Source: Thecamonas trahens ATCC 50062 | Lineage: Eukaryota; Protista; Apusomonadida | Reading direction: 5' to 3' | Length of the DNA stretch: 64,000 nucleotides | Assembly (NCBI RefSeq): GCF_000142905.1 | Contig: NW_013657653.1 | Location: 62,001-126,000, forward strand | Part shown: positions 1,860 through 56,554 of the stretch, one piece after another | Numbering within the stretch: the stretch's first letter is position 1 | Layout: each line of letters opens with the position of its first letter | Position numbers and translations under genes: made by a program | Notes under the pieces: generated by a model | Told to the model about the DNA's origin: nothing | What the model saw: the letters and a program-made list of their open reading frames with translations, nothing else | Database searches by the model: none

Positions 1860-4107
1860 TCAGAACCGTACTCTGCGGACCTCGCCGCGCTCCGGATCGC
1901 CGACGCCGCCCGAGGCGAACTCGTCGAGCGGCAGCGTCGAGGCCAGCAGCTCGACGCCGACGTCGTCCGAGTTGATGGGCGAGCGGACGGCCGACGGTGC
2001 ATTCTCGTCACGCTCGAGTTCGGCGTGCATGTCATCGGAGCAGAGGTCCGACGACGACGAGTGCCCACCAAGCGGGGCGCTGATGGCAGCGGCCGCGGTG
2101 CCGCCGCCACCGTCGCCGCCGCTCGAGCCGTGCATCCGTGTCGCTTCGACCGCCCGCCGGTACTGCTCGCGGGTGATCTGCCAAATCTGGACGGTGTTGG
2201 TCGAGGGATAGGCGGTAAAGTTGGGGTCGAACATGCCCGCACGCAGCAGCGCACTGTCAGCGTCGTCCTCGTCCGAGCCCTCGGGGTCGTCGGCGGTGAG
2301 GAGCTCGATGCCGAGGACCGAGTAGGGGCCAGCAAAGGAGAGGAAGCCCTCGGCGCCGGCGTGGACCTCGAGCTTGCCCTGCAGTACGAGGGTGAAGCGC
2401 GTCGACGGCTCGCCGCGGAGGTAGACCGCCTTGCGGTCGGCGACGGTGGAGCCCTCGGTCGGCCCGTCGATGGTCGAGACGGTGCCCTGCGAGCAGAGCT
2501 TGCGGAGGATCGACGGCTCGATGTGGTCGGCGCCAAACGGCTCGACCATGGAGAGCAGGTACGCGTACAGGCCATCGAGCTGCTGCGGGGTTAGGTGCTG
2601 GGTCGCCGCCCGCTTGCGGCGGAGCATGGCAGCAAAGTTGGGCCGCTGCGAGTCCTGGACCGGGAGCAGACCCATGTTGTCGACGTAGACATCAGTCTCG
2701 TCGACAATCTCGTCCATGATCAGCTCCTCGATGACGTCCTCGAGCGTGACAATGCCGACCGTCTCGTAGAACGGGTCGCCAGGGCCGTCGTTGTTGACTC
2801 GCTGGACGAGTGCCAAGTTCGAGTGCCCGGCGCGCTTGAACTGATTGAGCGCCTTGTCAAGCGTGGTGTCGTCAAACATGCGCTGGACAGGCTTGCCATA
2901 GAACTGCAGAATGGTCCGGATCGGGGTCCGGTCCTCGGGCGAGAGCAGCGCGAGGTGCTTGACCACCAGAAGGTAGTCGATGTTGCGGTCCGGCCCATCA
3001 TGGACCGGGATCCGCGAGTAGCCCGACTCCATGATGGCCTCGAGCGTCTCGTAGTCGAACAGGGCGTCGGCCGAGATGGAGAACGCCTTGGCGATCGGGG
3101 TCATGACGTGCCGGATCGACTTGCGCGAAAAGTCGAGGACGCCCGAGAGCAGCTTGTGGTCTGCCGATGTGAGGTCTGAGTCGCGCTCGCGTGCATGGAT
3201 CAGCATCAGCTGCTTCAGCTGCGTCTTGGTGTAGATGGTGCCCACCTCGTGGCCGAGCACACGGTCCAAAACCTTGGAGATCGGCCAGGCCAGCGGCGCC
3301 ATGAGGAACATGAACACCTTGACGATCCACACCGTGTACGCGCCCACCATCAGTCCGTGTCGCGAGCACCCGGCCTGCGGCATGATCTCGCCAAAGATCA
3401 CAATAAGCACCGTCGACAGGAGGAAGCCCACCACGCCCGACGTCAGGTCAGCGAGCAGAATCGAGAGCAGCGCGTTGACAGCCACGTTGCCCAGCAGCAG
3501 CGTACACAACAAAAAGTTGCCCTTGACCCGGACAGGGTAGATCTTCTGCGCATACCGCTTCTCCTCGGGCGTCCCGGACGCCATCACAACTTCCAGCCCG
3601 ACCTTGTCGAGGCCCATCAGTCCGAGCGTCAGCCCCGAAAACAGCCCCGAGAGTACAATCAGAAACAGGATCGGCAGCAGCGAGATGTAGATGGGCAGTC
3701 CACCAGACTCTGTCATGTCCCGATCACCGACCACGATGCCGACCACGATGCCGACCACGATGCCGACCACGATGCCGACCACGATGCCGACCACGATGCC
3801 GACCACGACCACGACCATGATGCCGACCACAACAGCCATAAGTATGAAAAGTCCAGCAATGCCCAATCCCAAGCCCGCCATTCACACCACGACCCGAACC
3901 AGCACACCACCATGAGTCACAAGGAGGGGGGAGAGGGGGGAGAGGGGGGAGAGGGGGGGGGGGGGGGAGAAAGAGGAGGAGGGGGAAGAGGAGAAAGGGG
4001 GGAGTAGTAGAGGGGGTAGGTGGGCGGGGGGGGGGGAGGAAGATACGGTACGTACCGTCGGCAGCCGTCGGCAGGACACAGGTCGTGGCATTGATCACGG
4101 TCGCCAT
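1860..4107 (-). CDS. CNNM: CNNM/DUF21-CBS metal transporter; exons 4107-4056 and 3709-1860
   Basis: DUF21 motifs (SGLFSGLTLGLMGLD, LLCTLLLGNVAVN, FGEIMPQA), CBS pair (GYSRIPV, GIVTLEDVIEEL) and a cNMP-like C-terminal domain. A phase-1 GTACGT..ACAG intron joins MATVINATTCVLPTAAD-E-SGGLP in frame. Confidence 0.93.
3727..3830. repeat. 12-bp tandem repeat (CCGACCACGATG) x6 plus degenerate copies, inside the CNNM intron
   Basis: Seen directly; it explains the spurious (VVGI)n, (PTTM)n and (DHDA)n ORF translations. Confidence 0.95.
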
Positions 4108-5553
4108 GCGCCCACCTCGAGGCGTGACGGGGGGGAAGGGGGGTTGAGAGGAGGGAGGAGGGGGAAACGACTAGGTGTGCTACTCTCAAGAGCTTCCACA
4201 CACACAAAGACAAGAGACTGGTACTCTCCCGTGTCAAGTATGCCCCCCAGTCGTTGTCCCTCCTTCTGTCCCTGGTCGACTCCATTGGCTGTCTCGCTCG
4301 CCTGCCGTGATGGCCTTGCACCGGTTCCCAACCAATCGACGGGGCAGGCCATCCACCTGGATGATCGAACTGGCCGGCCATCCGCCTGGCTGATGCTGAT
4401 GATCTCGAAGGTGGCCTGGAGAAAGAGGATGAAGTGAGTGTCCTCCTGCCACATTGATAATTTACCTATCAAGCGAGGAGATCTGCTTGATTAGCTTGCC
4501 TGCACCCATCTCATGGGGATTCCCATGTCCAGACCTTGCCAAACTGGCACACTTCTGCCCCGCCCGGAGAGATACGCTGCTCTTTCCCAGACTTTGATCC
4601 CTACTACCTTTGTATCCTCAGACTGCAGAGGTGCGCTTGATGGTGTGGCGGTGCTAAACAGCATGTCCATCGCATCACCTGTGTCCAATGTCAACCACCA
4701 CCACCACCATCGCTATCATCATCCACCGCCATGCCGACCAAGATCGCCATCCCCAACGTGTAAATCAATTAATGATGTAGGCTAGAGGCTCCGCGCACCA
4801 GCCGAACATCTACTTTGGCCTGGCTCAGTTTGCGGCCCGTGCTCTTGGGCTTGGCTCCGTGGTATCACGTGGCGTGGACTTGAGTTGGGGCGGATGGTCG
4901 CCGTCGGCGTGGTCGAGGCCGACGGAGGAACTGGCTCCATGGTCCTCACAACGTCATGATGATCTCTGTCATGCTCTTGGCGGTTACCGGGCATAACGAG
5001 ATCAGGCGCCTCGCGGCTCCTGGCCTACTACGTCCCGAGGTGGATTGGGGAAGGGCTGGTGCGCCAAAATGGTGCGCGAAAAAGCCGCGCCGGCCTCGCC
5101 GACCTCCACGCACGACGTCAGCCAACGCCTCGACGAGGCGCTCGGCAGTCACGTCCTCGTCGGCAGACGCCACCCTCACCCTCCCTACCACAGCGGCCCA
5201 AGCGGGGCTCCATTCTTCCCCCCCTTCGCCTCGAACAGCTCCATCACGCTCGCCGCCTACTACCGATCGTGCTTGACCTTGATCTCTGCTCCAGCCCGTT
5301 GATCAGGGCGTGCGTTGGGGGGGAGGGGGGCATTGATACACGCACACACATGGAAACAAACACACACACATACACACATTGCCACCAGAACTATTATGAT
5401 CCCAAGTGTGCACACCCTCTGTCCCATTAGCCCCGGCCGGGCCCTACCCAGATCGTGCGATCCACGGACTCGCGCTCTCAACCACGTCGACCCACCCTCA
5501 TCCTGCCCAACCCCAAGTACGTACACACACACACACCTCTGCTCCATCATCGC

Positions 5554-5814
5554 ATGCCGACCCTTCCTGGCTCCAAGCTTCCTGTTGTGGCAGTTTGGGC
5601 CTTTGCAATGGCTGCAGTCAACGGAGGCATTGCCTACGCCATGTGGGGCGACCGCGGGGTGGCGCTGCGAGGCCGTATGCGCAAGATGATGGGCGTGCCT
5701 GATCCTCCGGGAACACGATCGCAGGGCCTGCCAACCACCTCATCGCCCTCTGCTCTCGCCAGCTCTGCCTCTACTCCGGCTGCTGAGTCCAGCTCGGATG
5801 GCGATGCTTCATGA
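5554..5814 (+). CDS. Putative 86-aa small protein with one hydrophobic segment
   Basis: ATG at 5554; MPTLPGSKLPVVAVWAFAMAAVNGGIAYAMWG followed by a basic stretch and a Ser-rich tail. No homology recognised. Confidence 0.4.
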   Translation: MPTLPGSKLPVVAVWAFAMAAVNGGIAYAMWGDRGVALRGRMRKMMGVPDPPGTRSQGLPTTSSPSALASSASTPAAESSSDGDAS

Positions 5815-5929
5815 GCAAGCGCTGCGTCTCCCCTCCTCCTTCTCGGCACAACCTGACTAAGCCTCACGATACAATGCTGCCATGCACCTCGCACCGCACC
5901 GCTACACGCTGGCCAAGCGCAATCATCAT

Positions 5930-6398: not shown

Positions 6399-7094
6399 CT
6401 ACTCACATCACATCAACAATACCACACCAACGGTTCCACAGTGTGAGTCATACACATCGCCATCCCCATCCCCGTCCCCGCCCCCTCCCCCCTCCCCCCG
6501 ACCCCGTCATGCTGGTCACAACTCGTTTCGAGTCATGCATACAAAAACAGAGGCTGTTCAGCGGCGCGCTTCCGCTCCCCAACAACAGCCCAGAGTGCAG
6601 CAATCAAGCCCATCTTTTCCAGACAGATGCATACAACATGGTACTTGAGCATGGCGTGGACGGTGGCTGAGGGTTCGTCTTCTCTTTGACTCCAGCCACG
6701 GGAACTCGATCGAGCCTCGCCCTGCCGGGGATGAATACATCGAAAACCAGAGGCTCACCGCCACCTCCCCGAGTCTCAAGAGCCTCGCATCGGAGCTACC
6801 ATAGAGCTATACACACATATTTCCCCTAAACTTTGAGCTATACCACACTCGCAACTCTCTACCGAGAAGCCCGAGCGTAGCTGCGCTATCTGGTCCGTGG
6901 GTGGCCTCGATACTTCGCCCGACCACGCCGACTCCAAAAATGGCTTCATCCCCCCCATCGTCCAGCATGGTGACCTCTTCGGAGGCCACAGCCATGGCGG
7001 GGACGGGGGAGAAGGGCATGCGAGGTGCTCGTATCTTCTAGCTCACATATGCATGGCTGGTTCACGTAGTCGTGCAAGTAATCATGTTACGTAC
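6399..7094 (-). other. Predicted 5'-UTR intron of BTF3
   Basis: GTACGT donor at 7094, GACTCAC at 6449-6443, TAG acceptor 2 nt before the ATG, and nested inverted arms 6635-6720 versus 7020-7088. Alternative GTATGC donors exist at 6542 and 6634. Confidence 0.5.
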
Positions 7095-9494: not shown

Positions 9495-9874
9495 ATGACA
9501 ACGACAGCTACGTTGTCCGAGCTGAACAAGGTGCTGATGGGGCTTGAGAACGTGTCTACACGACTCGGTACGGAACGAAGGAGCGGCGGGAGTGCCGAGG
9601 GGAGGCGGCCCACGCCGTGTGAGGGTTGGCGGCTGGGGGTGTCGTCATGCTGGGCACAGGCACTCACACGTAGGCACAACCACGACGGGTGGTGTGTGGA
9701 AATGCGGTTTGCGCAGATGCAGTGGTGGAGGGGATGCAAGAGACAGAGCAGGTGCTGGCTACGGTTGTGGAGACACAAGAGGCTCTGTCAACAGTCGTGG
9801 GTGCTACCAGGGTGGCATGGGAGGGCATGCCGCCGCCGCCAACTCTGGCCTCATCGCGCACACAGGAGCTGTAG
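9495..9874 (+). CDS. 76-aa helical/coiled-coil microprotein; exons 9495-9567 and 9717-9874
   Basis: GTACGG donor, CACTCAC at 9661 and a GCGCAG acceptor give an in-frame join: MTTTATLSELNKVLMGLENVSTRLDAVVEGMQETEQVLATVVETQEALSTVVGATRVAWEGMPPPPTLASSRTQEL. Confidence 0.7.
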
Positions 9875-11019: not shown

Positions 11020-12649
11020 TTAAAGGTTGATGACACGGGAGAGCTTCTGCACCCGGTTGAGGAGCAGGTCACCCTGCTTAATGGTCTGCTGGTAGAGCGA
11101 GTTCTTCGAGTCGGAGCGGGTGGTGTAGATGGTGCCCGAGACGGCGTCGATGGAGCAGTGGACCCGGCCCGACGCAACAAAGCGCGAGAGCTCACGGTCA
11201 ATAAACTCAGCGGTGACCCCAAACTGAGCCGCCATCGACTCCATGGTGACCGAGCGGTACGAGCGCAGGATCTGGTTGTAGGCGCGAATGCGCATCTCGC
11301 GACAGTAGAAGCGGGCGTGCTCGTGCATGTAGCGGTCCTTGGCAAGCTCGTCGCCGAGTGCGGCGAGCGCAACAAAGAACTCGGCGTACTTGCACTCATA
11401 GAGCGCATGGAGAAGGTCGCCGGCGGCGCCGAGCTCCTTCGACACCGACAGCACGTCGGGCGACTGCATGAGCTTGTCCTGCAGATCGACGCGCGGGAGC
11501 TGGAGCGAGCCCATGATGACCGCGTACCGGATGTACGTCGCAAACGGCGCAAGCTCGTACGACGTAAACGTCGCCAGCGTGTCTATATGCAGAGAAATGC
11601 GCGAGGTGAGTGGGGGTAAAGAAGGCAGCAGCACACAAGTACAAAGCCCAGGGGGGCGGAACCAAACCAAGATCAGCGGTTTTGGTAAATAAGATAGTGT
11701 CCTCAGAAACGTCGACAAACGTAATCAGCAGCAGATCTGATTAGTCATCATCTCAAGGTTGGTCCGCAAAAAAAAGTGTTGGGAAACAAAGCAAGTTCGT
11801 ACCAAGGAACAGCTGTGACGACTTGTCGAACGAACGAATCGACATGTTGTACACAGCCTGGTAGGCCATGAGCCTGTTGCGGCGCTCCCAGTCGCCGCCC
11901 TTCTCGGCGAGATCGGCAGCCTCGGGAAGCACACCCGCAAGCAGGACGTGGTCAAGGTAAAAGAGGCCTAGGCGGGCCTTGAGGAAGACAAGATCAAGCT
12001 TGAGGCCCGACCCGACCGTCTTCTCCATGGTGGCATCGATGGCCTCGAGCGAGGCCGTCCGGTCGCCCATGGCCACAAGGGCGAGTGCCTTGCGCTCCAT
12101 GTGGGCCCGGACCTCGACCTCACCCTCGGACTTTTCAGCCTCGGCGATGTCGGCGTCGATAGCCTCGAGCTTGGCCGCATTGGCCTTGGTCAGCGTCGCC
12201 ACCAGTTGGTCGTCCGCATCCCACCCGAGCCGCTCACACACATATGTGTAAAACGGCACCATGCCGTTCTTCTCCACCGCAGCCATGATTTTGGCCTTGG
12301 CCTCTTCATTGCCTGCATCCTGCTCGAGATCGAACAGAGCCTGCGGCAGCTGTACAATACTCGCCAGTTCGGTGTGGGTGAGTCAGAGAGGGGAGAGGAA
12401 AGGGGGGGGGGGCTTGGCCAAGGCGACCGACCGACAAAGAAAAATTCTGAGCGACGCGCCATTTTCATCAATTGATGGACGAAGGCGACCCGCTGCGGGA
12501 GAGCGGGGGGGGAAGGGCGGAGGGTAAGGAGAAGGAACAGCACCAACACCTAGTGGTAGCGGAGATGGGGGGAGGGGGAGGGGGAAGGGGGAGGGGGGGT
12601 TGCGTACGGTCAGGTCCGGGATGTACATCTCCGGAAGCAGCTCGTCCAT
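11020..12649 (-). CDS. PSMD6: 26S proteasome lid subunit RPN7; exons 12649-12608, 12349-11803, 11582-11020
   Basis: GGDWERRNRL, TFTSYEL, REMRIRAYNQIL.SY and KQGDLLLNRVQKL motifs; two GTACG..AG introns join in frame. Confidence 0.97.
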
Positions 12650-16715: not shown

Positions 16716-17978
16716 ATGGTACGCAACACAAGCCAGAGTAGCCTAACCTTCCCCGCACAATCTTTCCCATAGTGCTATGACATACGGCATAATAATGAGG
16801 GTACGAGACGGGANNNNNNNNNNNNNNNNNNNNNNNNNNNNNNNNNNNNNNNNNNNNNNNNNNNNNNNNNNNNNNNNNNNNNNNNNNNNNNNNNNNNNNN
16901 NNNNNNNNNNNNNNNNNNNNNNNNNNNNNNNNNNNNNNNNNNNNNNNNNNNNNNNNNNNNNNNNNNNNNNNNNNNNNNNNNNNNNNNNNNNNNNNNNNNN
17001 NNNNNNNNNNNNNNNNNNNNNNNNNNNNNNNNNNNNNNNNNNNNNNNNNNNNNNNNNNNNNNNNNNNNNNNNNNTCCCCACCTCCCTTCCTCGTCCTCTC
17101 TCCCCCTCCCCCTCCCCTCCCTCCTCTCTCTCTCTCTCTCTCTCTCCCTCTCTCCCTCTCCCCCTTCCGTCCTCCCTACGGCCGCATTGTCCCCCTTCCC
17201 CCTCCCTCCCCTTCCTCCCTCCCCGCATCACTCACATGGTGTGGCCACTCTATGACAGAGCATCATGACGTACAATGGCGCCGCCATCATCGCCATGAAG
17301 TACGTGAACAGGACGATGATAAGGGTGTGAGGGTGGGGGGAGGAGAAGGTGATAGTGTGCGGGGGGTGACTCATCATGTGTGGCGTGGTGCGCAGGGGCA
17401 AGGACTGCGTGGCGATCGCGTCGGATACCCGGCTGGGCATCCAGGCAATGACGGTGGCGACGGACTTCCAGAAGGTCTTCAAAATCCACGACTACCTGTA
17501 TCTGGGCATGGCCGGGCTTGCGACGGACGTGCAGACGCTGGACGCACTGTTCCAGTTCAAACACAACATGTTTGCGCTCCGGGAGAACCGCAACATGTCG
17601 CCGTCAGCCTTTCTGGCGATGGTCTCTTCGACGCTGTACTCGAAGCGGTTTGGCCCGTACTTTGTGGAGCCTGTTGTGGCCGGCCTCACGGTCAAGCCTG
17701 ACGGAAGCGTGGAGCCGTACGTGGGCGGCACCGACCTGATCGGCTGCATCTCATCACCGGATGGCTTTGCCGTCTCGGGCACCATGTCCGAGGCCCTCTA
17801 CGGTCCGTGCGAGTCGATGTACAAGCCCGATCTCGAGCCTGAGGACCTGTTCGAGACCATCTCGCAGTGCATGCTCGCCGGCGTCGACCGCGACGCTGTC
17901 TCGGGCTGGGGCGTCGTCGTCCACATCATCACCAAGGACGAGGTCATCACACGCCACCTCAAGAACCGCATGGACTAG
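16716..17978 (+). CDS. PSMB3: 20S proteasome beta-3; exons 16716-16718 (ATG only), 17259-17299, 17396-17978
   Basis: The spliced product [53 protein letters not shown] matches beta-3. ccaccATG|GTACGC supplies the start; an alternative in-frame ATGAGG|GTACGA exists at about 16795. Confidence 0.96.
16814..17074. other. Assembly gap inside PSMB3 intron 1
   Basis: Run of N flanked by low-complexity C-rich sequence. Confidence 1.
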
Positions 17979-18174: not shown

Positions 18175-19417
18175 TCAGATGTTCGACGGGAAGAGCATGA
18201 CGCGGACGGGGGCGCCGAACGAGCGGGGCGGGAGGTTGCGCTTGAACTTGGCGCGGACAAGGCCAGAGTTGCCGTGCGGGCGGGTGATCTTGCCCCAGAT
18301 GTAGCGGGTGGTCGAGCCCTTGAGGTCCTTCTTCTCGCCCTTGTAGACGTACGCGACGCGCTTGCCAACGTAGAAGTTGGTGGCCTTGCGGGTGTTGCAG
18401 CCCTCAAGCTTGAGGAGCGAGGTGTGCGGGTAGTGGACAACCTTGGACCTACAGTAACCATGCCAATGCCAGCGTATGCGTGAGTGTGGCTCGTGTGGTA
18501 GGCGGGGGGGAGGGGGGGGGGACGGGGCGGGGGAGGAGGTGAAAATGACAAAGTGGGGGAACGGGTGATCACCAGCTGGCCAATGGTGAGCCTCGGTCGA
18601 GTGGGAAGGGGGGGGGGGCCGGGTCGGCACGCGCTGGCGCGACGAGAGAGAGCAAGACGGAGCGAGGACAGCAGATGGGGGAGGCAATGGGCATAAACAC
18701 TGGGTTGACGAGTACAATGACCACAGCAGCGGCGTGTGGTAGAGGGAGGAAGTAGCGAGGGAGAGCGGGAGAGAGAGGGGAGGAGAAGGAGGGGAAGGGG
18801 GGAGGACAAAGTCATACAAAAATGGGAGGGGGAAGAAGGGACGTACCGCTTGTAGCCAACGTGGACAGCCTTGACGTAAGTGCTGTAGTGGGGTAGCACG
18901 GACATAGAGCAATGATGTGAGTCTGTTCGATGGTCTGTATCTCTTCTCCCTTGCCCATACCAGCTGTGTATGAGCCCCCTAGGCGGTGGTCGGTGATGGC
19001 CGAACACCCAAATTAATGGTCGGGTCGAGGCCGAGGCCAGGCCGACTTTGGGAGCGGAGCACAGGGGGGACAGACACTCTTACACGAGCACCAGAAGGTC
19101 AACGATGTGCGCACCAAGCGTAGACACCTCATATACCCTACTGGAGCGTGCTCGCTCACTTGTGCTTCGCTGTGGCGAGGCCGAGAGGATGGCGGACGAG
19201 CCGACAAAGGCAGTCCTCAGCCCATTTTCTCTCCCTCGCTCCCATCCCACCGCCACCCCCAAGGAGACGAGGACTACCTTGGAGGCAACCAAGCACAAGC
19301 TAAGATATCAAGCGCATGCGTGGGTACCTCCAGTACGATAGGCACTCATACTACTTGGTCGTGGCTGCTGTCAACTCTCTCACTCCCTTTGTCTCATCCT
19401 CTCACGTACCGCGGCAT
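18175..19417 (-). CDS. RPL35A: 60S ribosomal protein eL33/L35a; exons 19417-19410, 18882-18847, 18448-18175
   Basis: The spliced product is [60 protein letters not shown] (105 aa). Confidence 0.96.
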
Positions 19418-20165: not shown

Positions 20166-22049
20166 ATGGCGGCGTCCTACGAAGCTGTGAAGGAGACGTT
20201 TGAGCGTGCCAATGCCGAGAAGGAGATCAACCCAGCTGCGGCTGTGACCAAGTACCGTTCGCTCCTTGAGCTTAATCCCAGTACGTGATGATGGTGATGA
20301 TGGTGGTGGTAGAAGGGGGTGGAAGGGTGGGTAGGGTGGGTAGGGCGGGTAGGGGGTAGGCAGGGGGTAGGGATGGGGGACTGGGATGAGAAGATAGACA
20401 GAGAGAGGAAGGGAGAGGGTGTGTATGTATGATATAGAAGTGGTGAATATAGCTGGTTTGTGTGTGGGAGACTGGGGGTGGGGAGGTGGTGGAGGTCGGT
20501 GGAGGTAAAGGTGCCTGTGGTTGGCTTGGTCGGTGGTCAAGGCGACCTGTGCCCGGCCCCGCCCCGCCCCCCCCCCCCCCCCACCCCGGCCACCCAAACT
20601 CGCCAGCTCCAACCCCCACCAAGCCACACACTCTGCCTTTCACTACCTCCCACATACTACACACATACCCTCCATTTCTTCTGCTGTCACATACGTCATG
20701 CATGGACACGTGGTGGACATGGTGGTCTCCTGTGGTCGGTGCTGGTGGGAAGCGGCAAATTCCTCCAGGCGCGCACTCGTCGGCAGGAAGGGTATGGCGG
20801 AGAGAAAGAGAGGGACACTCACGTGATACCGAGTCGATCTGTGGCTGTGGCTGTGGAACGTGCATGCGAACGGATAGAGGACGATCCGGAGAAGATTGCT
20901 GAGCAGGCGCTGGTTGCGCTGGGCGAGGTGCTCGTGGCTCAGGGCGATGCCGGAGCCATTGTGGAGCTGTTTGAAGTGGTCAAGGGCATGGCAGAGATGA
21001 TGTCCAAGGCGCGGACGGCAAAGATTGTGCGAATGATGCTGACGGTGCTGGGCAAGGTCGACGAGGGCTCTGTGCTCTCTGTCTCTGTCGCAGAGGGTCT
21101 CATCGAGTGGGCCAAGGAGACAGGACGCAAGTTCCTGCGGCAGCGGCTGGAGGCGTCGCTGGCAGGCATGTACGCAGACGCCGGCGAGTACTCCAAGTCG
21201 CTGACGCTTCTGGCGCCGGTGCTCAAGGAGGTGAAGAAGCTGGAGGACAAGCTGCTCCTCGTGGAGCTGCACCTTGTGGAGTCTCGGGTCCACCACGCGC
21301 TGCGCAACCTGCCCAAGGCCAAGGCTTCGCTGACGTCTGCGCGGACGTCGTCGACAGCGGTCTTTTGCCCGCCGCTCATGCAGGCGCAGATCGAGTCGCA
21401 GGCCGGCGTGCTCCAGGCCGAGGAGAAGGACTACAAGACGGCGTACTCGTACTTTTTCGAGGCCTTTGAGGGCTACGCCTCGCTGGCAGCCATGCCCGAG
21501 CTCAACACCGAGCCGCTGGCTGTCGCTTCGCTCAAGTACATGCTGCTGTGCAAGGTGATGATGGACAAGCCACAGGAGGTGACCTCGGTCGTCAACAACA
21601 AGGCCGTCCTCAAGTTCTCAGGCGACCACGTGACGGCCATGCAGGCCATCGCCGCCGCCGCTATCGACCGCTCGCTGCACAAGTTCCAGGCCGCCATCGA
21701 TGAGTACCCGTCCCACCTGGCCGAAGACCCAGTCATTGCCGCACACCTCAAGACCCTCTACGACTCGCTGTTCGAGGCTAACCTCCTCCGCATCATCGAG
21801 CCGTACACCTCGGTCCAGGTCGCTCACATCGCACAGACCATCGCCCTCCCGCTCGACGTTGTCGAGTCCAAGCTCTCCAAGATGATCCTCGACGGTAAGC
21901 TCTCGGGCGTCCTCGACCAGGACGTCGACGCCCTCATCGTCTACGACGAGCCCAAGCAGGACAAGGCCCTGGCCGCCTCGCTCGACGTCATCGACAACAT
22001 GTCGCAGGTTGTCGACTCGCTCTTCAACAAGGTCAACAACCTGTCATAG
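20166..22049 (+). CDS. PSMD11: 26S proteasome lid subunit RPN6; exons 20166-20280 and 20878-22049
   Basis: KARTAKIVR, FLRQRLE, EKDYKTAYSYFFEAFEG, LKYMLLCK and a PCI domain; phase-1 GTACGT..TAG intron. Confidence 0.97.
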
Positions 22050-22285: not shown

Positions 22286-22534
22286 GTACGTATGCCATGA
22301 ACATGGAGTACCCCCCCCCTCCCCCTCCCCCACCACCACCACCCCTACCACACACACACACAATACTAGTGCCATGTACTCTGTGCAGAGTGGTTACCTC
22401 GGCAAGGAGGTGGTCAATGAGCTGCAAGTGCAAGGAGAACAGCAGGGAGGGTGCCCGCTGTTGTTGATGAGATATTTTTGGGTGTGTTTTTTGTCTGACT
22501 CACACACAAGTTGCTCATGGTGATGTGGATACAG
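22286..22534 (+). other. Predicted 5'-UTR intron of RPLP0
   Basis: GTACGT at 22286, GACTCAC at 22497 and the first downstream CAG at 22534, 62 nt before the ATG. Confidence 0.65.
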
Positions 22535-28868: not shown

Positions 28869-29502
28869 GTACGTACCTCAGCTAGCCCAGTTTCTATACA
28901 TGATGATCATGTCTGATGTCTGTTATAATGCCTGGTTTCATGCCACACCTCGACCTGGCCACACCCCCCCGCCCCTTCTGTCGTGTCCGGTGGTGGCGCA
29001 GATGGTGGATGGAGTGGCACGACACGCCTGCGGGGACGGCGCTTTCTTTACAAGCCTCATGCCGTACAAGGTTTCATATACCAACCATCGCCAAGCTTGA
29101 TATCTTTGTGGGCGACTTGAGCTTGTGATCAGTGTCTCTTGGTATCAAACCTTGCAGTTTTCTCGTGGTTACCTTCTCCGCGCAGCACCTCGGCTCTCTT
29201 GGCCGCCGGCTGCTGTCCATCCGACGCCATCCCGCACACTCGCCGAGCACTCCCGCCAGAGGCCACCCACTGTGATAATGGAGTCGTGACAACTCGTCAA
29301 CCACATGATGTGGATGATGGATACCATGTCTTGTGGTTGTACTCCTGGTGTGGCAAGATGCTGAGGCATGAGCATGGTATAGGTGGTAAGAGTGAGGAGA
29401 GGCCGTCAGAAGCGGCCCACGTGTCGGCAGTCCCGGCGAAATGCAAACGTTTTCACTCACATTTTTTAACCCGCTATCACTTCTCGCTCTACACCCGCAC
29501 AG
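28869..29502 (+). other. Predicted 5'-UTR intron of the Mei2-like gene
   Basis: GTACGT at 28869, CACTCAC at 29454 and CAG at 29502 (18 nt before the ATG); the interior is a nested inverted repeat. Confidence 0.65.
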
Positions 29503-34500: not shown

Positions 34501-35384
34501 AGCAGACCCTTGCCCCTCCGCGCCCCCCCCCCCCCCCCGCGCCCCCTGCTCCTTTCCCGAGATCCAGACAAACACACACATGCACATGATCGCCATGCAA
34601 CTCTCATGGCCATCACCAGTGCCATGATTCCAGACCTCCACTCAGCCCGTCGACCAGACGACTACACGGAGCCAGCAATGCGACAGGAGACTGGCAGCGA
34701 GTGGCCAGGGGTGGGGGGGTGGGGGGGGTGGGGGGTGGTCCTAGGAGGACAAAACTAACAAAACGANNNNNNNNNNNNNNNNNNNNNNNNNNNNNNNNNN
34801 NNNNNNNNNNNNNNNNNNNNNNNNNNNNNNNNNNNNNNNNNNNNNNNNNNNNNNNNNNNNNNNNNNNNNNNNNNNNNNNNNNNNNNNNNNNNNNNNNNNN
34901 NNNNNNNNNNNNNNNNNNNNNNNNNNNNNNNNNNNNNNNNNNNNNNNNNNNNNNNNNNNNNNNNNNNNNNNNNNNNNNNNNNNNNNNNNNNNNNNNNNNN
35001 NNNNNNNNNNNNNNNNNNNNNNNNNNNNNNNNNNNNNNNNNNNNNNNNNNNNNNNNNNNNNNNNNNNNNNNNNNNNNNNNNNNAGGAGGAGAGGGATTAA
35101 GGGGATGAGAGGGAGGAAGGAAGGGAGAAGGGAGAGGGGGGAGGAGGGGGAGGAGGCGGGGAGGGGGGTACGTACGGAGTTCTGCTTGTGGCTAGGTCCT
35201 TGACAGCACGCTTGCGTAGGGCTTGGGAGATGGGCGAGAGTTTCTTGGGGAACTCCTCAGCGTAGTCGACGAGGTTACTCACGGCTTTAGTCGGCATACT
35301 TCCATCTTCAGACTTGTTATACACAGCATTGACAAGCCGTGTATGCATCCGCCGAGGTCGGCAGAACCCACAGCATCCCACCAT
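31578..35384 (-). CDS. EFR3: EFR3 homolog (plasma-membrane anchor of PI4KIIIa); exons 35384-35176 and 34428-31578
   Basis: N-terminal Cys cluster MVGCCGFC, RLVNAVY and LVDYAEEFPKKLSPI, followed by ARM-like helices; phase-2 GTACGT..CAG join. Confidence 0.85.
34767..35083. other. Assembly gap inside the EFR3 intron
   Basis: Run of N flanked by G-rich tracts. Confidence 1.
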
Positions 35385-38119: not shown

Positions 38120-39972
38120 TTATGACTTGTCCGAGTTGTCGGTCGTTGAGCCAGACGCTGAGCCTGTTGTGTCAAAGTCAACAAAGTCGGTTCGGTACGA
38201 CGAGTTGCCGTCAAAGTACTCAAAGTCGGTCGAGTACAGCTCGGCATCGTGCCACGAGCGGTTGTGTTGGGATGAGGAGGAGGCGGACGAGTAGGAGGAG
38301 GACCCGGCGTCGGGCTTGGCTGTGTCGCGCGATGCCGATCGGGACGCCGACCGCGTGTCAAAGGCCACAAAGTCGGTGACGTAGGCGTGAGAGGCGGAGG
38401 CGTGAGAGGGTGTCGAGTCGGCAGACACGGATGAGTTGTGGCTAGCGGCCGACAAGCTTTCGGGCACAGCGCCCTGAGCATCGTCGGATGCCGAGAGAAC
38501 CTTGGCCTCGCTGTGAGAAGGCGGATAGTGGCGGACGATGTGGGACGACCACTCGTACGACGCCGAACCAGAGCCAGAGCCAGAGCCGGCCAACCGAGAT
38601 GCCTCGGCTGGCGGAGAGGACTCGGGCGACGGAGATGACTCGGACTCAGACTTGGGCGACGGAGATGCCTCGGACTCAGACTCGGGCTCTGTGGCAGAGT
38701 CTGAGAGCTGGACAGAGGCCAGATCGTACTCGGACGGGAGATTGTCCAGCTCTTCAACGGGCACGTTCATGTACGAGAACGAATACTCGTACTCGTAGGT
38801 AAACGACGGCGAGCCCTTGCCCTTGCCCTTTCTCTTACCCTTTCTCTTACCCTTGCCCTTGCTTGTGCGCTTGCGCTTGCGCTTACCCTTGGACGCCTTG
38901 GCCGATCCCGAGCTGCTGGTAGTGGCAGCAGCACGCTCGGCGGCCTTGTTGGCGGAGTCGGCCTCGTCACGAGCGGCCGCCAGCTCCTTCTCCAGCTTTT
39001 TGATCCGCTTCTTCATGGCCTTGGAGTTGTCGGCCTCAGCCTGGGCCTCAGCCAGTTTGTCGGCCACCTGGTCGTAGGCAGCCTCCAGCTCGGCGATGCG
39101 GGCAGCGTGGTGCGACGACGACTTGGACGACGACGACGATGACGAGCCTGATGACGACGAGCCCGACGCCGACGAGCCTGACGAGGAGGCAGAAGAGGAG
39201 GCGCTCGAGACCGACTCGGAGACGATGATGTACTTGGGCACCCTCCGCCTACGCTTGCGCGGCAGCGGCTTGCCTGCAGCTGCGCCGGCGGCAAAGGTGG
39301 GATCATAGCCGTCAACGGCGTAGTTCCCGACATTGCCATACGTCCCGTAGACACCGTACGTGCCGTACGCCGGTGCATGTGGCTTCCGCCGCCGGACCCG
39401 CTTGCGGCGCTTGATCTTCCGCACGTGGGCGTGCTCGTGAACGAGCGAGCCATCGCTGGCACCATGCTTGCGGTGGCTGCTGTGCCGATGAGATGAGCGC
39501 CGCGAAACGCGGTACGAGTCCTTGGACCGGGACCGTCCCGGTTCGACGCGATACGAATCCTTGGAGTGTTTGCGCTTGCCTGTTGCCCCCATCACGCCAC
39601 CAAAGCGACGGCCACCACGACCGATGAGACGACGGCCACCACGACCGATGAGACGACGGCCACCACGACCAATGAGACGACAGCAACCATCGCAACCGAG
39701 CAAAGCGATGCGATTACGATAGCAGCCATATCCATAGATGCGACAGCAGCCACCACGACCGATGCAACGAAGGTAACCGCGACCGATGCGATGAACGCCA
39801 TCGGGCCATCGCCCGCACCAAGCCGACACCAACAAGTCATAGAGGACACATGCGATGATTTTCATGACCACGACAAGCAGCAGACGGTCCACCACCAACA
39901 AGCACGCCATCCATATCACCACCGATGATTGACATGAGTCACCCTTCCACGACCACAGCAAGCCAAGCCCAC

Positions 39973-40004
<32 letters not shown>

Positions 40005-40088
40005 CACGCGCGCCGCACACGCCACACATGCCACAAGGTGGCAGACACACCCATGCACACGATGAAAGAGCGTACTTGAACTACCCAT
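38120..40088 (-). CDS. Hypothetical basic/Ser-rich low-complexity protein with a coiled coil; exons 40088-40076 and 39579-38120
   Basis: A GTACGC..GACTCAT..CAG intron gives MGSSSKRKHSKDSYRV, a possible N-myristoylation site. The protein has polybasic tracts, a heptad region and YEYEYSFSY. Confidence 0.7.
39606..39677. repeat. 24-bp tandem repeat x3 (CGACGGCCACCACGACCGATGAGA), intronic
   Basis: Seen directly; the third copy has one substitution. Confidence 0.9.
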
Positions 40089-54100: not shown

Positions 54101-55083
54101 CGCCTGCTTCTCCTCCGACGTGGCAATCGACTTGACCAGCTCTGAGTACTCGTAGGCAATGACAAACCGCTCGCACCGCTCGAGCTCGGTCTTGTTCTGC
54201 GACCACTGGATGTATGCTTTGCGTTCCTTGCGCAGCTTCTCCAGCGTCGGCGAAATGTCTTCGTCGATGATCTTCTGGATCTCGTCGACCTTGCGCGCCT
54301 TCTTGGAGATAGTGTCGAGCGCAGCAGACTTCTTGGCCTCAAACATCGACGTTCCGGCTGTCTCCTCGATCATCTTGAGGATCTGCTTGGGCTTGGCGTT
54401 GAGCACCTTGGTAATCATACCCTGCATGACCAGGAACGTCGGCGTCTGCATGTTGAGCCCCACAGAGTGGAACATGTTCTGCACCCGGCTGCTCTCCACT
54501 CCTCGTCCGTCGCATGAGTCGCGCACGCACTACAATCTGATGTGTCCTCTGTGCGCAAGAGTCAGCGGCCGCTCTGGGGAAGGAGTGCGGGCAGAAAGGG
54601 CGCCAAAAACCAAAATTTCAAACACAGGCAGGGAGAGGCACGGCTGAGAGCATAGGCAGGCAGGGGGGGGGGGGGGGGGAAAGTAGGGAGGGAAAGGGGG
54701 AAGAAAGCGTACGCGAGGTTGGCCTGCCGTCCATTGATGATGTACTTGGAGCGGCCGCCGAGGGCGAGCTGGCGGGTGACGGTGATCTGGTTGAACTGCT
54801 CGTAGCCGACGGGCGACTGCTCCGGGTCGGTGTTGTCGAAGACAATGGTGACCGAGGCCTTGGTGACACCGGCCTGGCCGGACTTGTAGATGAGCGCATT
54901 GAGATTCTCTGCACGGAGCGAGCCCGGCGATGAGGAGAGGACAAAGAGAATGGCGTCGAGGATGTTACTCTTGCCCGACCCGTTCTTGCCCGTAATGGCA
55001 TTGAATGACCGGTCGAAGCCAGAGATCACCGTCCGCGTCGCGTACGACTTGAACCCATCCAGAATGAGCTCAAGAATGTACAT
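51170..55083 (-). CDS. SMC2: Condensin subunit SMC2; exons 55083-54713 and 54488-51170
   Basis: [36 protein letters not shown], the hinge [23 protein letters not shown] and [10 protein letters not shown]. Confidence 0.98.
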
Positions 55084-55225: not shown

Positions 55226-55316
55226 AACGAGAGTTTATCGACATCAATCAACTGAACGAGAGTTTATCGTAGCATCGATCAACTGAATGAGAGTTTATCG
55301 TAGCATCGCTCAACGG
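55226..55316. repeat. 29-31-bp tandem repeat x3 (AACGAGAGTTTATCGTAGCATCGATCAACTG) in the SMC2/REEP divergent spacer
   Basis: Seen directly; AT-richer than its flanks. Confidence 0.9.
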
Positions 55317-55445
55317 AACAACAGCACTCGATTATTAATCTCCCAACGAACAACAAGCAACCGCTTTCAATGGCGACCTCGACCCGTCGCAGACGCCACA
55401 CTTGTCGTGCACTGTGCACACCCGTACACCTCCGATCGCACCGCG

Positions 55446-56554
55446 ATGATCGGGTATTACCTTGCCTACGTGCTCTCACTCGTCATTGGAATCATGTTCC
55501 CTGGTACGCAGTGAAGAAGGGCCGAGCGTTGAGCGGGGTAGGGAGTGAGTGGGGAGGGAGAGGAGGAGCGAGGCGCGTTTGTTCAAACTTTGCGAACGTT
55601 CCTTCCCTCGGCAGCCGGGGTGGGACATACGGGTGGATGAGGAGCTAGGATGAGAGAAGAGAATACTCACTCGCAGAGATGATACTTGTGTGTGCATACT
55701 ACGGCGGTATGCGGTGTGTGTGTGTGTGTGTGTGTGTGGTATGTGGCGGTGGGACGTGGGGACCCATGTTGTGAACGGCGCGTGCGACGGCTTGGACGAC
55801 TTGTTGGTGGCTGGCGAGGCCGACAGCTTATCACTCGTTCAAGGCGCTGGAGGCGCAGTCTCTTGACGGATGCGAGCAGTGGCTGACGTACTGGGTCTGC
55901 TTTGCGGCGTTCTCGCTCATGCCGTCGTTCCTCATCTCGTGGGTCCCGCTCTACTACGAGGGCGAGGTTCTCTTCCTCCTCTGGCTCCAGCTGCCGCAGA
56001 CACAGGGCGCTCACTGGCTCTTCCATCGGTACATCCGCCCGCACCTCAAGCACAACGAGGAGCACATCGACCGCCACCTCGCCGAGCTCTCGACCAAGGG
56101 CATCGAGAAGGTCCGCTCGCTCTCGGCGTCGTACATCCCCACCATGTCGAGCATCATCATCAACGGCGTCACCTACGCCCAAAAGGTGGCCACGTCGTCG
56201 CTGGCGGCTGACGCCCGCGCCCAGGCCGCCGCCGCTGCTGCAGCCGCCGCGCCCGCTGAGGATGCTCCCGCCGCCGATGAGGACGACGGCGACGACGCTG
56301 GTGTCGCGCTTCCGCCCCCGGCTTCTCCTACTCCCCTCACCCCGCCGCCGGCCTCAGCGTCCGTTGCTGCCGTGACGGATGAAAACGCCGCCACCGATGC
56401 GGCCGACGAGATCGTCATCAACGGCATGGTCTACACCCGCACGGCCTCGCTTCCGGCCAAGACCTCCGTCTCGCCCGAGGCCCGCCATGGTGCTGCCAAG
56501 CCGCGCACCATCTCCTCCATGTTCCGTCGCCACCCTACCCTGCCGCGGGCATGA
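55446..56554 (+). CDS. REEP/HVA22 (TB2/DP1) ER-shaping protein; exons 55446-55503 and 55827-56554
   Basis: The spliced product reads FPAYHSFKALE..QWLTYWV..WVPLYYE....FLLWL..PQTQGA..LF..YIRP. Confidence 0.92.

What the first reader, a model, noticed from the sequence alone, without database searches (positions are those of the whole stretch)
3710..55826. Near-invariant splice code: GTACG donor, ACTCAY branch motif, first downstream YAG, often no polypyrimidine tract
Seen: 17 of the 18 reconstructed coding introns begin GTACG and one begins GTATGT. All 18 contain ACTCA(C/T), for example at 9661, 11612, 12384, 17229, 17368, 18486, 18923, 20816, 24104, 34452, 36143 and 54520. The acceptor used is the first CAG/TAG more than about 10 nt downstream, with GAGs skipped. 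Many acceptors are purine-rich (GGGGAGCAG, GGAGAGCAG, AACGGATAG, GGGGCAACAG). Known: strong branch and donor consensus evolves in intron-poor lineages (yeast GTATGT/TACTAAC); U2 GUAGUA pairs with the branch site and U6 ACAGAGA reads donor +4 to +6. Inference: this is a lineage-specific branch-point-anchored code with +4C and CTCAY in place of CTAAC, possibly with co-evolved U1/U2/U6, SF1/BBP or reduced dependence on U2AF65. I do not know of a description of it but could not search the literature.
Basis: partly seen in the sequence, partly recalled or inferred. Interest (0 to 1): 0.85.

Follow-up and report, generated by a model that had tools for sequence, protein, structure and literature searches.

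The report
Strict splice signals in Thecamonas introns
Introns of the marine protist Thecamonas trahens nearly all start with GTACG, carry one ACTCAY branch motif and end at the first CAG/TAG after it. The odd start was already published, but the branch motif breaks the CTRAY rule of other strict-signal organisms, and its partner RNA (U2) could not be found.

Summary
The genome is Thecamonas trahens ATCC 50062 (exact protein matches). I reconstructed 21 introns in the window. Twenty begin GTACG and one GTATG. Each holds exactly one ACTCAY, against about 2.5 expected in all. Each ends at the first YAG lying 18-355 nt after the branch A. Nearer YAGs (7 nt or less) and all AAG/GAG are skipped. 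There is no polypyrimidine tract.

Thirteen junctions have support that does not use the motifs: one RNA contig, plus Pfam or PDB residue continuity. Both assembly gaps lie inside introns and break no reading frame. In an unbiased hexamer scan of the window plus 200 kb of another contig, ACTCAC ranked first. ACTGAY and ACTAAY showed no signal.

The +4C donor and an unchanged U1 were already reported (Roy & Bowser 2022), and I reproduced the standard U1. The only U6-like gene keeps ACAGAGA. SF1, a U2AF65-like protein, a METTL16-family protein and SNRNP27K are all present.

What appears new is a pyrimidine just before the branch A. This violates the WCTRAYN consensus of all other strong-branch lineages. 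No U2 was detectable, so U2 co-evolution stays open. Other first-stage notes in this scan report the same signals elsewhere in this genome.

The parts
3710..4055 (-). Possible first intron of the CNNM-type transporter gene (GTACGTAC donor; ACTCAT, branch A at 3913; 203 nt to CAG)
   Evidence: Rests on the motifs only. Splicing joins a short exon (MATVINATTCVLPTAAD) to the main ORF in frame. An in-frame ATG 7 nt before the acceptor makes the intron dispensable for the ORF.
6399..7094 (-). 5'UTR intron of the NAC-beta gene (GTACGTAA; ACTCAC, A at 6444; 45 nt to TAG)
   Evidence: The start codon lies 2 nt after the acceptor. The ORF carries a NAC domain.
9568..9716 (+). Candidate intron (GTACGGAA; ACTCAC, A at 9666; 50 nt to CAG; a TAG 7 nt after the A is skipped)
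   Evidence: Frame-compatible, but the flanking coding scores are weak and there is no Pfam hit. Low confidence.
11583..11802 (-). RPN7 intron 2 (GTACGAAC; ACTCAC, A at 11607; 24 nt to TAG)
   Evidence: Exon 2 ends at RPN7 profile position 137 and exon 3 starts at 139, so only the junction codon lies between. It is also the top candidate in a scan that used coding score alone and no motif.
12350..12607 (-). RPN7 intron 1 (GTACGCAA; ACTCAC, A at 12379; 29 nt to CAG)
   Evidence: In-frame join of a 14-codon first exon to exon 2, with coding scores 7.5 and 9.1. Exon 2 carries the RPN7 domain.
16719..17258 (+). Proteasome beta-3 intron 1, directly after the ATG; spans the assembly gap 16814-17074 (GTACGCAA; ACTCAC, A at 17234; 24 nt to CAG)
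   Evidence: Sequence. Exon 3 residue 1 aligns to residue 16 of solved beta-3 chains. This leaves exactly the 15 residues that ATG, the 41-nt exon 2 and the junction codon supply.
17300..17395 (+). Proteasome beta-3 intron 2 (GTACGTGA; ACTCAT, A at 17373; 22 nt to CAG)
   Evidence: residue count is continuous with PDB beta-3 numbering.
18449..18846 (-). Ribosomal protein eL33 intron 2 (GTACGTCC; ACTCAC, A at 18481; 32 nt to TAG)
   Evidence: Exon 3 residue 1 aligns to residue 18/19 of yeast eL33. The upstream exons supply the N-terminus in register.
18883..19409 (-). Ribosomal protein eL33 intron 1 (GTACGTGA; ACTCAC, A at 18918; 35 nt to CAG); followed by a 36-nt exon (18847-18882)
20281..20877 (+). 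RPN6 intron (GTACGTGA; ACTCAC, A at 20821; 56 nt to TAG; purine-rich 3' end)
   Evidence: Best-coding of the three possible donors. Exon 2 starts at RPN6_N profile position 32.
22286..22534 (+). 5'UTR intron of RPLP0 (GTACGTAT; ACTCAC, A at 22502; 32 nt to CAG; an AAG is skipped)
   Evidence: RNA evidence. Metatranscriptome contigs in runs X1 and X2 start matching at 22535. They carry 10 unmatched letters that equal window 22276-22285, the bases just before the donor.
23866..24167 (+). Actin-related protein intron 1 (GTACGTAT; ACTCAC, A at 24109; 58 nt to CAG)
   Evidence: Exon 1 ends at Actin profile position 34 at its last residue. Exon 3 starts at position 63 at its first residue. The 30 residues between are supplied by exon 2.
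24256..24629 (+). Actin-related protein intron 2, the single GTATGT donor (ACTCAT, A at 24444; 185 nt without any YAG before the CAG)
   Evidence: P(no YAG) is 0.011 in shuffles of the tract.
26487..27054 (-). Intron of a KHA-Ras GTPase gene (GTACGCAT; ACTCAC, A at 26653; 166 nt to CAG)
   Evidence: Exon 2 residue 1 aligns to KHA profile position 20. The 20-codon exon 1 supplies positions 1-19.
27560..28043 (-). Candidate last intron of the ATP synthase subunit f gene (GTACGTTC; ACTCAC, A at 27599; 39 nt to CAG), before an 8-codon terminal exon
   Evidence: WRW profile 27-94 of 102 in the upstream exon. Weak.
28869..29502 (+). Probable 5'UTR intron of an RRM protein gene (GTACGTAC; ACTCAC, A at 29459; 43 nt to CAG)
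   Evidence: Motifs, plus coding that begins just after the acceptor.
34429..35175 (-). EFR3-like gene intron 1; spans the assembly gap 34767-35083 (GTACGTAC; ACTCAC, A at 34447; 18 nt to CAG)
   Evidence: By my reading of the sequence (not tool-tested), exon 1 encodes a Cys-rich EFR3-type N-terminus. Exon 2 continues in the frame of the ORF that carries EFR3_ARM.
35748..36182 (+). Intron of the eIF3B/eIF2A-like (RRM + WD40) gene (GTACGTAC; ACTCAC, A at 36148; 34 nt to CAG; a CAG 5 nt after the A and three RAG are skipped)
   Evidence: Top candidate by coding score alone. By eye, the RRM start (LLLVTNLP) lies in exon 1. Exon 2 starts at RRM_1 profile position 13.
39580..40075 (-). Candidate intron after a 4-codon first exon (GTACGCTC; ACTCAT, A at 39935; 355 nt without YAG before the CAG)
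   Evidence: Motifs and frame only. P(no YAG) is 0.001 in shuffles. Low to moderate confidence.
54489..54712 (-). SMC2 intron (GTACGCTT; ACTCAT, A at 54515; 26 nt to CAG; pyrimidine share 0.18; four RAG skipped)
   Evidence: Exon 1 residues 1-122 align to SMC2 chain 9f5w_A residues 1-123. Exon 2 residue 1 aligns to residue 126. Also the top candidate by coding score alone.
55504..55826 (+). Intron of a TB2/DP1/HVA22 (REEP) gene (GTACGCAG; ACTCAC, A at 55669; a CAG 7 nt after the A is skipped; 157 nt to the CAG used)
   Evidence: Exon 2 residue 1 aligns to profile position 3 of TB2_DP1_HVA22. In-frame junction.

Best explanation
These are ordinary GT-AG (major-type) spliceosomal introns of Thecamonas trahens that obey an unusually strict, lineage-specific set of signals.

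DONOR. The 5' splice site is GTACG(Y). It pairs with an unchanged U1 5' end at five of six positions, with a mismatch at +4.

BRANCH SITE. Each intron has one ACTCAY (more rarely ACTTAY). Its second A is most likely the branch adenosine.

ACCEPTOR. The second step uses the first CAG or TAG, usually preceded by a purine, that lies beyond a dead zone after that A. The dead zone covers at least 7 nt; the nearest acceptor actually used is 18 nt away. The distance can reach several hundred bases. No polypyrimidine tract is needed.

This is the yeast-like way of choosing a 3' splice site: branch-anchored, first usable AG.

SHOWN: the motifs, their counts, the junctions, the standard U1, and the presence of SF1, U2AF65-like, METTL16-family and SNRNP27K genes. 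INFERRED: that the A of ACTCAY is the branch point, and that the 3' site is found by scanning or diffusion from it.
For: - Species: exact matches to T. trahens ATCC 50062 proteins on the same assembly.
- 21 introns: 20 GTACG and 1 GTATG; exactly one ACTCAY each, against about 2.5 expected in total.
- Junction support independent of the motifs: RNA contig for RPLP0; PDB residue continuity for SMC2, proteasome beta-3 and eL33; Pfam profile continuity for RPN7, KHA-Ras, the actin-related protein, REEP and the eIF3B-like gene.
- Coding score alone picks the GTACG/ACTCAY candidate as best in three of three clear cases.
- Unbiased scan of all hexamers for 'the first YAG downstream is a coding onset': ACTCAC ranks first (24/131 against a 4.3% background, z 7.9) and ACTCAT fourth.
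- The scan replicates in the separate 200 kb alone (17/103, z 6.3).
- Base before the branch A: ACTCAY 39/219, ACTTAY 7/28, ACTAAY 2/26, ACTGAY 2/103.
- TACGT is the most enriched of all 1024 pentamers upstream of such motifs (27/46 against 49/201, p 1e-5).
- YAG-free tracts: about 30 YAG expected, none seen beyond 8 nt. For the independently fixed acceptors the joint probability is about 5e-7 (my product of its rows).
- 14 of the 21 introns contain no CTRAY anywhere.
- The introns share no sequence apart from low-complexity stretches.
Against: - Only one junction has direct RNA support, and that is a 10-letter overhang of an assembled contig. No lariat data exist, so the branch nucleotide is inferred.
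- Four of the 21 introns rest mainly on the motifs themselves.
- Introns lacking the motifs would be under-detected by my reconstruction. I found none, but I did not annotate every gene.
- For the long-distance cases (157-355 nt), a cryptic branch nearer the 3' end cannot be excluded.
- The sample is 264 kb of a 28.7 Mb genome.
Confidence: 0.85

Rival explanations
1. The branch motif co-evolved with U2 snRNA. T. trahens U2 would carry a changed branch-binding sequence, for example a G where other eukaryotes have the conserved (pseudo)uridine of GUAGUA. That G would pair with C and wobble with U at the base before the branch A, and would exclude purines there.
For: - The base before the branch A is C, less often T, and never the usual A/G. 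This is the pattern a U-to-G change at that U2 position would predict.
- No U2 was found with the Rfam model.
- No U2 was found with patterns for five conserved U2 segments: (up to 3 mismatches); 77-79; 94-96.
- A human-identical 18S 28-mer is visible in the served genome.
- The only U6-like gene is itself very divergent (26 bits, CGC in place of the AGC triad).
- U4 is undetectable.
Against: - Absence from a search is weak evidence. The genome tool scores only a subset of first-look candidates, and snRNA genes are often missing from draft assemblies.
- An earlier agent of this scan reported a box C/D guide that fits the standard U2 A30 region (I could not re-find it).
- U1 did not co-evolve with the donor. 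In other lineages, transformed signals mostly lack snRNA compensation (Roy & Bowser).
Confidence: 0.2
2. ACTCAY is not the branch site. It would instead be a binding site for some other intronic factor, with the real branch points being weak, variable sites nearer the 3' splice site.
For: In five introns the motif lies 157-355 nt from the acceptor, far for a branch point. Loose A-containing sites exist near some of those acceptors (my reading).
Against: - The motif fits the general yUnAy branch consensus.
- It occurs exactly once per intron, and 16 of 21 copies lie 18-58 nt from the acceptor.
- YAGs are purged between the motif and the acceptor, but not upstream of it, where they run at 1.9 per 100 nt. 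A branch-anchored search predicts exactly this.
- YAGs within 7 nt are skipped, as expected from the known steric minimum after a branch.
- 14 of 21 introns have no CTRAY at all.
Confidence: 0.08
3. The uniform signals are inherited from a recently multiplied mobile intron family (introners) and are not imposed by the splicing machinery.
For: The signals are near-identical in many introns, at about 0.7 introns per gene in this window (my count of roughly 30 genes). Low-complexity and short TTCG-type repeats are enriched in the introns.
Against: All-against-all BLAST of the 21 introns, and of the introns against 200 kb of another contig, finds only short low-complexity matches. Lengths range from 96 to about 750 nt. 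By my reading, positions are biased toward the 5' ends of conserved housekeeping genes, as in intron-poor lineages shaped by intron loss.
Confidence: 0.04
4. The pattern is an ascertainment artefact. The introns were reconstructed by looking for the motifs, so their uniformity is circular.
For: GTACG is common by chance (about 1.2 per kb per strand). Open frames are long in this 62% G+C genome. Motif-guided scans give many false candidates. Two candidates I examined were false (26094-26533 and 13072-13381).
Against: - Thirteen junctions are fixed by RNA or by residue continuity with homologues.
- Coding-only scoring recovers the same junctions.
- The hexamer and pentamer scans were motif-blind and replicate on a separate contig.
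- The published +4C logo is independent.
Confidence: 0.03

Closest known systems
T. trahens donor preference reported by Roy & Bowser 2022 (bioRxiv 10.1101/2022.06.08.495308)
   Same: Same organism and assembly. They report a preference for C at intron position 4 and a single U1 candidate with the standard pairing sequence, so no compensating change. I reproduced both.
   Different: In the text I could read, they describe the branch motifs of this species only as 'canonical' and common. The text does not mention ACTCAY, the pyrimidine before the branch A, the first-YAG rule, the long YAG-free tracts, or the state of U2, U6, SF1 or U2AF.
Hemiascomycete yeast introns (Saccharomyces cerevisiae: GTATGT, TACTAAC, first AG after the branch; established knowledge and Irimia & Roy 2008, PMC2483917)
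   Same: Near-invariant six-base donor with a pyrimidine at +4 that mismatches U1. Near-invariant branch hexamer. The 3' splice site is chosen as the first usable AG after the branch, with no requirement for a pyrimidine tract. Occasional long branch-to-acceptor distances. Introns concentrated near 5' ends and in ribosomal and proteasome genes.
   Different: +4 is C, not U. The base before the branch A is C/T, not A. Intron density here is about 0.7 per gene in the window (my gene count), against about 0.05 in yeast (recalled value). The genome is G+C-rich.
Strong-branch-point intron-poor lineages surveyed by Irimia & Roy 2008 (yeasts, Cyanidioschyzon, Trichomonas, Giardia, Encephalitozoon)
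   Same: A single dominant branch hexamer of the form A-C-T-x-A-C.
   Different: The paper states that all such lineages conform to WCTRAYN. Here the R position is a pyrimidine, and ACTGAY/ACTAAY show no signal. [quoted passage not shown]
Mamiellales green algae (Micromonas, Ostreococcus: GYGCGY donors, ACTGAC branch) and Entamoeba (GTTTGT)
   Same: Transformed, homogeneous donor signals at moderate intron numbers. In Mamiellales, U1 is unchanged.
   Different: Their branch motifs keep the purine (ACTGAC). Entamoeba has a near-fixed branch-to-acceptor distance, whereas here the distance ranges from 18 to 355 nt.

Membership tests
Major (U2-type) spliceosomal introns | GT...AG termini | tested here: met
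   21 of 21 introns.
Major (U2-type) spliceosomal introns | Donor complementary to the U1 snRNA 5' end | tested here: met
   U1 at G000 C10:232060-232228 has ACUUACCU. GUACGU pairs at +1, +2, +3, +5 and +6 and mismatches at +4.
Major (U2-type) spliceosomal introns | [quoted passage not shown] | tested here: met
   CUCAY is present in all 21 introns, 18-355 nt from the AG.
Major (U2-type) spliceosomal introns | Branch motif pairs with the GUAGUA of U2 snRNA | tested here: inconclusive
   No U2 gene was found. Against a canonical U2, the base before the branch A would be a C-U mismatch.
Major (U2-type) spliceosomal introns | Lariat formed at the branch adenosine | not testable with these tools
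   Needs lariat sequencing or primer extension.
Strict-signal ('transformed') intron-poor lineages, as defined by Irimia & Roy 2008 | The same branch hexamer in more than 50% of introns | tested here: met
   ACTCAC in 16 of 21 and ACTCAY in 21 of 21 window introns. Motif-blind enrichment on a second contig.
Strict-signal ('transformed') intron-poor lineages, as defined by Irimia & Roy 2008 | Branch motif conforms to WCTRAYN | tested here: not met
   The R position is C (minor T). ACTGAY 2/103 and ACTAAY 2/26 sit at background level. 14 of 21 introns have no CTRAY at all.
Strict-signal ('transformed') intron-poor lineages, as defined by Irimia & Roy 2008 | About 0.1-0.15 or fewer introns per gene | tested here: not met
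   21 introns in roughly 30 genes of this window, about 0.7 per gene. The gene count is my own, and covers one window only.
Minor (U12-type) introns | RTATCCTT donor and TCCTTRAY branch motif | tested here: not met
   No donor or branch of this form among the 21 introns.
Introner-type mobile introns | Sequence similarity between copies beyond the splice signals | tested here: not met
   Only short low-complexity matches.

The most novel reading that the evidence does not exclude
Thecamonas trahens has a remodelled catalytic snRNA core. U2 would be so changed, including its branch-binding GUAGUA, that standard models and conserved-segment patterns miss it, and it would have co-evolved with an ACUCAY branch site. 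U6 would carry CGC in place of the AGC triad. If so, this would be the first eukaryote known to have a compensating change in the U2 branch-recognition sequence.
Probability: 0.2. Interest if true: 0.85.

Novelty: new variant of a known kind. Interest (0 to 1): 0.55.

Why it matters
Strict splice signals have been tied to extreme intron poverty, and until now always to a CTRAY-type branch site that pairs with the invariant GUAGUA of U2.

Here a free-living relative of animals and fungi appears to keep introns in about half of the genes in this window, all held to a near-invariant donor and branch motif. The branch motif puts a pyrimidine opposite the conserved pseudouridine of U2.

That gives a concrete test of how far branch-site recognition can drift without, or with, a change in U2. 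It also bears on whether strict signals can be kept across a large set of introns; extrapolating this window suggests thousands, but I did not count them genome-wide.

In practice, the code (GTACG, then ACTYAY, then the first YAG) is sharp enough to correct gene models in this genome. The public annotation has been flagged for many non-canonical introns (PMC11347168).

Tried and rejected
RNA EVIDENCE.
- One read-laying run on 19201-25200 with four metatranscriptome runs covered only RPLP0 fully. RPN6 and the actin-related gene were covered in part, with no contig crossing their junctions.
- The listed 'joints' come from other organisms' conserved genes.
- Only the RPLP0 5'UTR junction could be read, from a loose end.

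PUBLIC GENE MODELS. An exact look-up of a window protein is blocked for the window's own genome.

FETCHING MORE GENOME.

WEAK STATISTICS I ABANDONED.
- K-mers downstream of all GTACG, swamped by chance GTACG and low-complexity sequence.
- Donor spectrum at coding drops, confounded by stop codons.
- Donor/branch order within 700 nt, saturated.
- Strict two-flank coding filter (12 hits against 0-8 for control motifs), which loses the many 5'-terminal introns.

FALSE OR UNNEEDED INTRONS.
- 26094-26533 is false: its 'acceptor' is the DTAGQE motif inside a Ras ORF.
- 13072-13381 is false.
- The break in the ABC transporter near 47626-47632 looks like a 1-nt frameshift, not an intron.
- 10196-10987 is a separate Arf gene, not a further RPN7 exon.

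U2 HUNT.
- Rfam RF00004 found nothing.
- Patterns for U2 nt 20-46 and 25-46 with up to 3 mismatches found nothing.
- I listed hits to AGATCAAGT (first 100 of 194 shown) and all hits to AGATCAAGTG, each with downstream sequence.
- The stem-loop IV loop gave 7 hits, none U2 by cmscan.
- The stem IIa region gave no U2.
- Look-alikes were chance: C9:351726 is coding sequence; C16:347970 is a tandem coding repeat; C4:125963 lies inside an intron and is not structured.
- A snoRNA-guide route to read the U2 sequence indirectly hit only coding sequence.
- The snRNA-like element noted earlier in the COX6A intron matches no Rfam family.

OTHER BLANKS. U4 (RF00015) was not found. A canonical U6 39-mer with up to 3 mismatches was absent.

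STEP LEFT OUT. 

Full report
WHAT THE WINDOW IS

The window is 62% G+C, densely packed eukaryotic DNA. It has long ORFs for housekeeping proteins: RPLP0, RPN6, an actin-related protein, SMC2, ABC transporters and an eIF3B-like protein. It is contig 27 (62001-126000) of a 28.7 Mb assembly in 131 contigs. Earlier agents of this scan named the genome Thecamonas trahens. I checked this independently. Three complete ORFs from contig 1 of the same assembly are exact matches to proteins of T. trahens ATCC 50062 (AMSG_00017, Tsr1, cruzipain), recorded on a contig of the same length, 716,227 nt.

THE ASSEMBLY GAPS

I tested the gaps first, as asked. Both lie inside introns.

In the proteasome beta-3 gene the start codon (16716-18) is followed directly by a GTACGC donor at 16719. 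The gap (16814-17074) sits in C/T-rich intron sequence. ACTCAC follows at 17230 and the acceptor CAG at 17256-58.

In the EFR3-like gene (minus strand), exon 1 (35384-35176) ends at a GTACGTAC donor at 35175. The gap follows, then ACTCAC at 34451 and the acceptor ending at 34429. Exon 2 continues in the frame of the long ORF.

No reading frame depends on the unread letters. Only these two intron lengths are uncertain.

THE INTRONS

I reconstructed 21 introns (table; listed under parts). Support that does not use the motifs is as follows.

- RNA. Assembled metatranscriptome contigs from two runs of one study match RPLP0 from 22535 onward. They carry ten extra 5' letters that are identical to window 22276-22285, the ten bases just before a GTACGT at 22286. 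This defines a 249-nt 5'UTR intron with ACTCAC 32 nt before its CAG.
- Solved structures. SMC2 exon 1 aligns to residues 1-123 of chain 9f5w_A and exon 2 starts at residue 126. Proteasome beta-3 exon 3 starts at residue 16, which leaves exactly the 15 residues given by ATG, a 41-nt exon and the junction codon. eL33 exon 3 starts at yeast residue 18/19, in register with a 36-nt micro-exon and a 5-nt coding first exon.
- Pfam profile coordinates. RPN7 runs 1-137 then 139-174 across the junction. KHA starts at position 20 at the first residue of exon 2. Actin runs 3-34, then exon 2, then 63-408. TB2/DP1/HVA22 starts at position 3 at the first residue of exon 2. RRM_1 starts at position 13 near the start of exon 2 of the eIF3B-like gene.
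- Coding score alone. A scan that ignored extended motifs ranked the GTACG/ACTCAY combination first for RPN7, the eIF3B-like gene and SMC2.

Four introns rest mainly on the motifs and frame compatibility, and I mark them weak: 3710-4055, 9568-9716, 27560-28043 and 39580-40075. 

THE SIGNALS

- Donor: GTACG in 20 introns and GTATG in 1. Position +6 is T 13, C 6, A 1, G 1.
- Branch motif: exactly one ACTCAY in each intron (C 16, T 5 at the last position), against about 2.5 expected in all intron sequence.
- Acceptor: CAG 17 and TAG 4, with a purine at -4 in 20 of 21.
- Branch A to AG: 18-355 nt, median 39.
- Between the motif and the acceptor there is no YAG beyond 8 nt. Composition-matched shuffles expect about 30.
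- Restricting to the 12 acceptors fixed by RNA or homology, about 13 are expected and the joint probability of none is about 5e-7 (my arithmetic on the rows).
- Upstream of the motif, YAG occurs at 1.9 per 100 nt.
- Three YAGs within 7 nt of the A are skipped. So are 17 AAG/GAG.
- The pyrimidine share between branch and acceptor averages 0.48 and is as low as 0.18, so there is no polypyrimidine tract.

IS IT MORE THAN ASCERTAINMENT?

For every hexamer in the window plus 200 kb of contig 1, I asked how often the first YAG at least 7 nt downstream coincides with a coding onset.

- ACTCAC ranked first of all hexamers (24/131 against a 4.3% background, z 7.9). CACTCA ranked third and ACTCAT fourth. 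The other high scorers were low-complexity intron sequence.
- The result holds on contig 1 alone (17/103, z 6.3).
- Varying single positions shows the base before the branch A: ACTCAY 39/219, ACTTAY 7/28, ACTAAY 2/26, ACTGAY 2/103. Some ACTTAY cases look like real introns with GTACG donors.
- Upstream of such motifs, TACGT is the most enriched of all 1024 pentamers (p 1e-5).
- 14 of the 21 introns contain no CTRAY anywhere.
- The introns share no sequence apart from low-complexity stretches, so they are not copies of a mobile element.

THE MACHINERY

- U1: one gene (C10:232060-232228, 52 bits). It has the standard ACUUACCU 5' end, the U1-70K and U1A loop motifs and an Sm site. GUACGU pairs with it everywhere except +4.
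- U6: the only hit (C7:485429-485533, 26 bits, below Rfam's threshold) has a 5' hairpin, an intact ACAGAGA, an ISL-like hairpin with a pentaloop and a T-run terminator. It reads CGC where U6 has its AGC triad. A canonical U6 39-mer with up to 3 mismatches is absent.
- U2 and U4: not detected. Six further pattern searches for conserved U2 segments gave only chance matches. Limited sensitivity of the tool's first look, or an incomplete assembly, may explain it.
- Proteins: SF1 with its helix-hairpin domain (98.8 bits; the KH GPRG loop and QUA2 helix are visible in the ORF by eye), a U2AF65-like protein (250 bits over the three RRMs), a METTL16-family methyltransferase and SNRNP27K are all encoded.
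U2 remains open.

WHAT IS KNOWN

- Roy & Bowser (2022 preprint) list T. trahens among six lineages with massive intron loss and a donor that does not fit U1. They report its preference for C at position 4 and a single U1 candidate with standard pairing. That half of the finding is therefore already described.
- They refer to the branch motifs of this species only as canonical.
- The T. trahens motif departs from both rules. It has a pyrimidine at the R position, and intron density is about 0.7 per gene in this window (my count of roughly 30 genes).
- In established models the R position pairs with the first U, a conserved pseudouridine, of the U2 GUAGUA. A C there is a mismatch unless U2 has changed. 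This rests on my own knowledge of U2-branch pairing.
- I found no paper that names ACTCAC or ACUCAC as a branch consensus.
- Two other first-stage notes of this scan report the same donor and branch motifs on other pieces of this genome.

VERDICT

It works like the yeast system, with a strict donor, a strict branch site and the first usable AG, and it belongs to the major spliceosomal class. It is a new variant of the known 'transformed splice signal' kind. The donor part is published. The branch-site departure from CTRAY, the long YAG-free tracts and the apparent absence of recognisable U2 and U4 genes are the parts worth following up.

Noticed in passing
L001:1501-1605 (G000 C7:485429-485533, + strand): The only U6-like gene found. 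It has a 5' hairpin, an intact ACAGAGA, an ISL-like hairpin and a T-run. It reads CGC where U6 has the AGC catalytic triad, and scores only 26 bits. From memory (not checked here), CGC is the triad variant of group IIC introns.
   Followed up: partly
whole genome G000: No U2 or U4 snRNA gene was detectable with Rfam models or conserved-segment patterns, although U1 is found and rRNA segments identical to human are visible.
   Followed up: partly
window 47600-47760 (+): The ABC transporter reading frame shifts by one base near 47626-47632, between the membrane domain and the ATPase domain. There is no room for an intron. It looks like a homopolymer sequencing error or a real frameshift.
   Followed up: partly
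window 18847-18882 (-) and 16716-17299 (+): Very small exons. There is a 36-nt internal exon in the eL33 gene. In the proteasome beta-3 gene, the coding part of the first exon is the ATG alone, followed by a 41-nt second exon.
   Followed up: yes
window 24450-24626, 55675-55823, 39583-39930, 26490-26650, 3713-3910: Long tracts (about 150-350 nt) between the branch motif and the acceptor that contain no CAG or TAG at all. Those I read (for example 24450-24626) are mostly G/T-rich. This implies selection against any earlier acceptor.
   Followed up: partly
window, all 21 acceptors: The base before the YAG is a purine in 20 of 21 introns (A 13, G 7), giving an RYAG acceptor.
   Followed up: no
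window 22535-23660: RPLP0 mRNA nearly identical to this strain (3 differences in 1126 nt) is present in subsurface and marine metatranscriptomes from two studies, so close relatives of the sequenced strain are active in nature.
   Followed up: no
L040:1501-1514 (G000 C4:125963): A 14-nt match to the U2 region AGAUCAAGUGUAGU, probably the one noted earlier in this scan. It lies inside an intron (GTACGT donor at L040:1354, ACTCAC near 1665) and is not significantly structured, so it is most likely chance.
   Followed up: yes
introns of the window and of L003-L022: Short TTCG/AACG-type repeats (TTCGTT, GTTCGT, ACGAAC) are strongly enriched upstream of branch motifs (z up to 14), along with C-rich and TG-repeat tracts.
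   Followed up: no
window 13025-16488 (+): Two strongly coding segments in different frames overlap at 14272-14314. This is a possible further frameshift or an unusual junction.
   Followed up: no
window 4055, 28869, 35175, 35748 and 5517/5524: The donor is often the 8-base palindrome GTACGTAC (4 of the 21 introns). At 5517/5524 the same palindrome reads as a donor on both strands.
   Followed up: no
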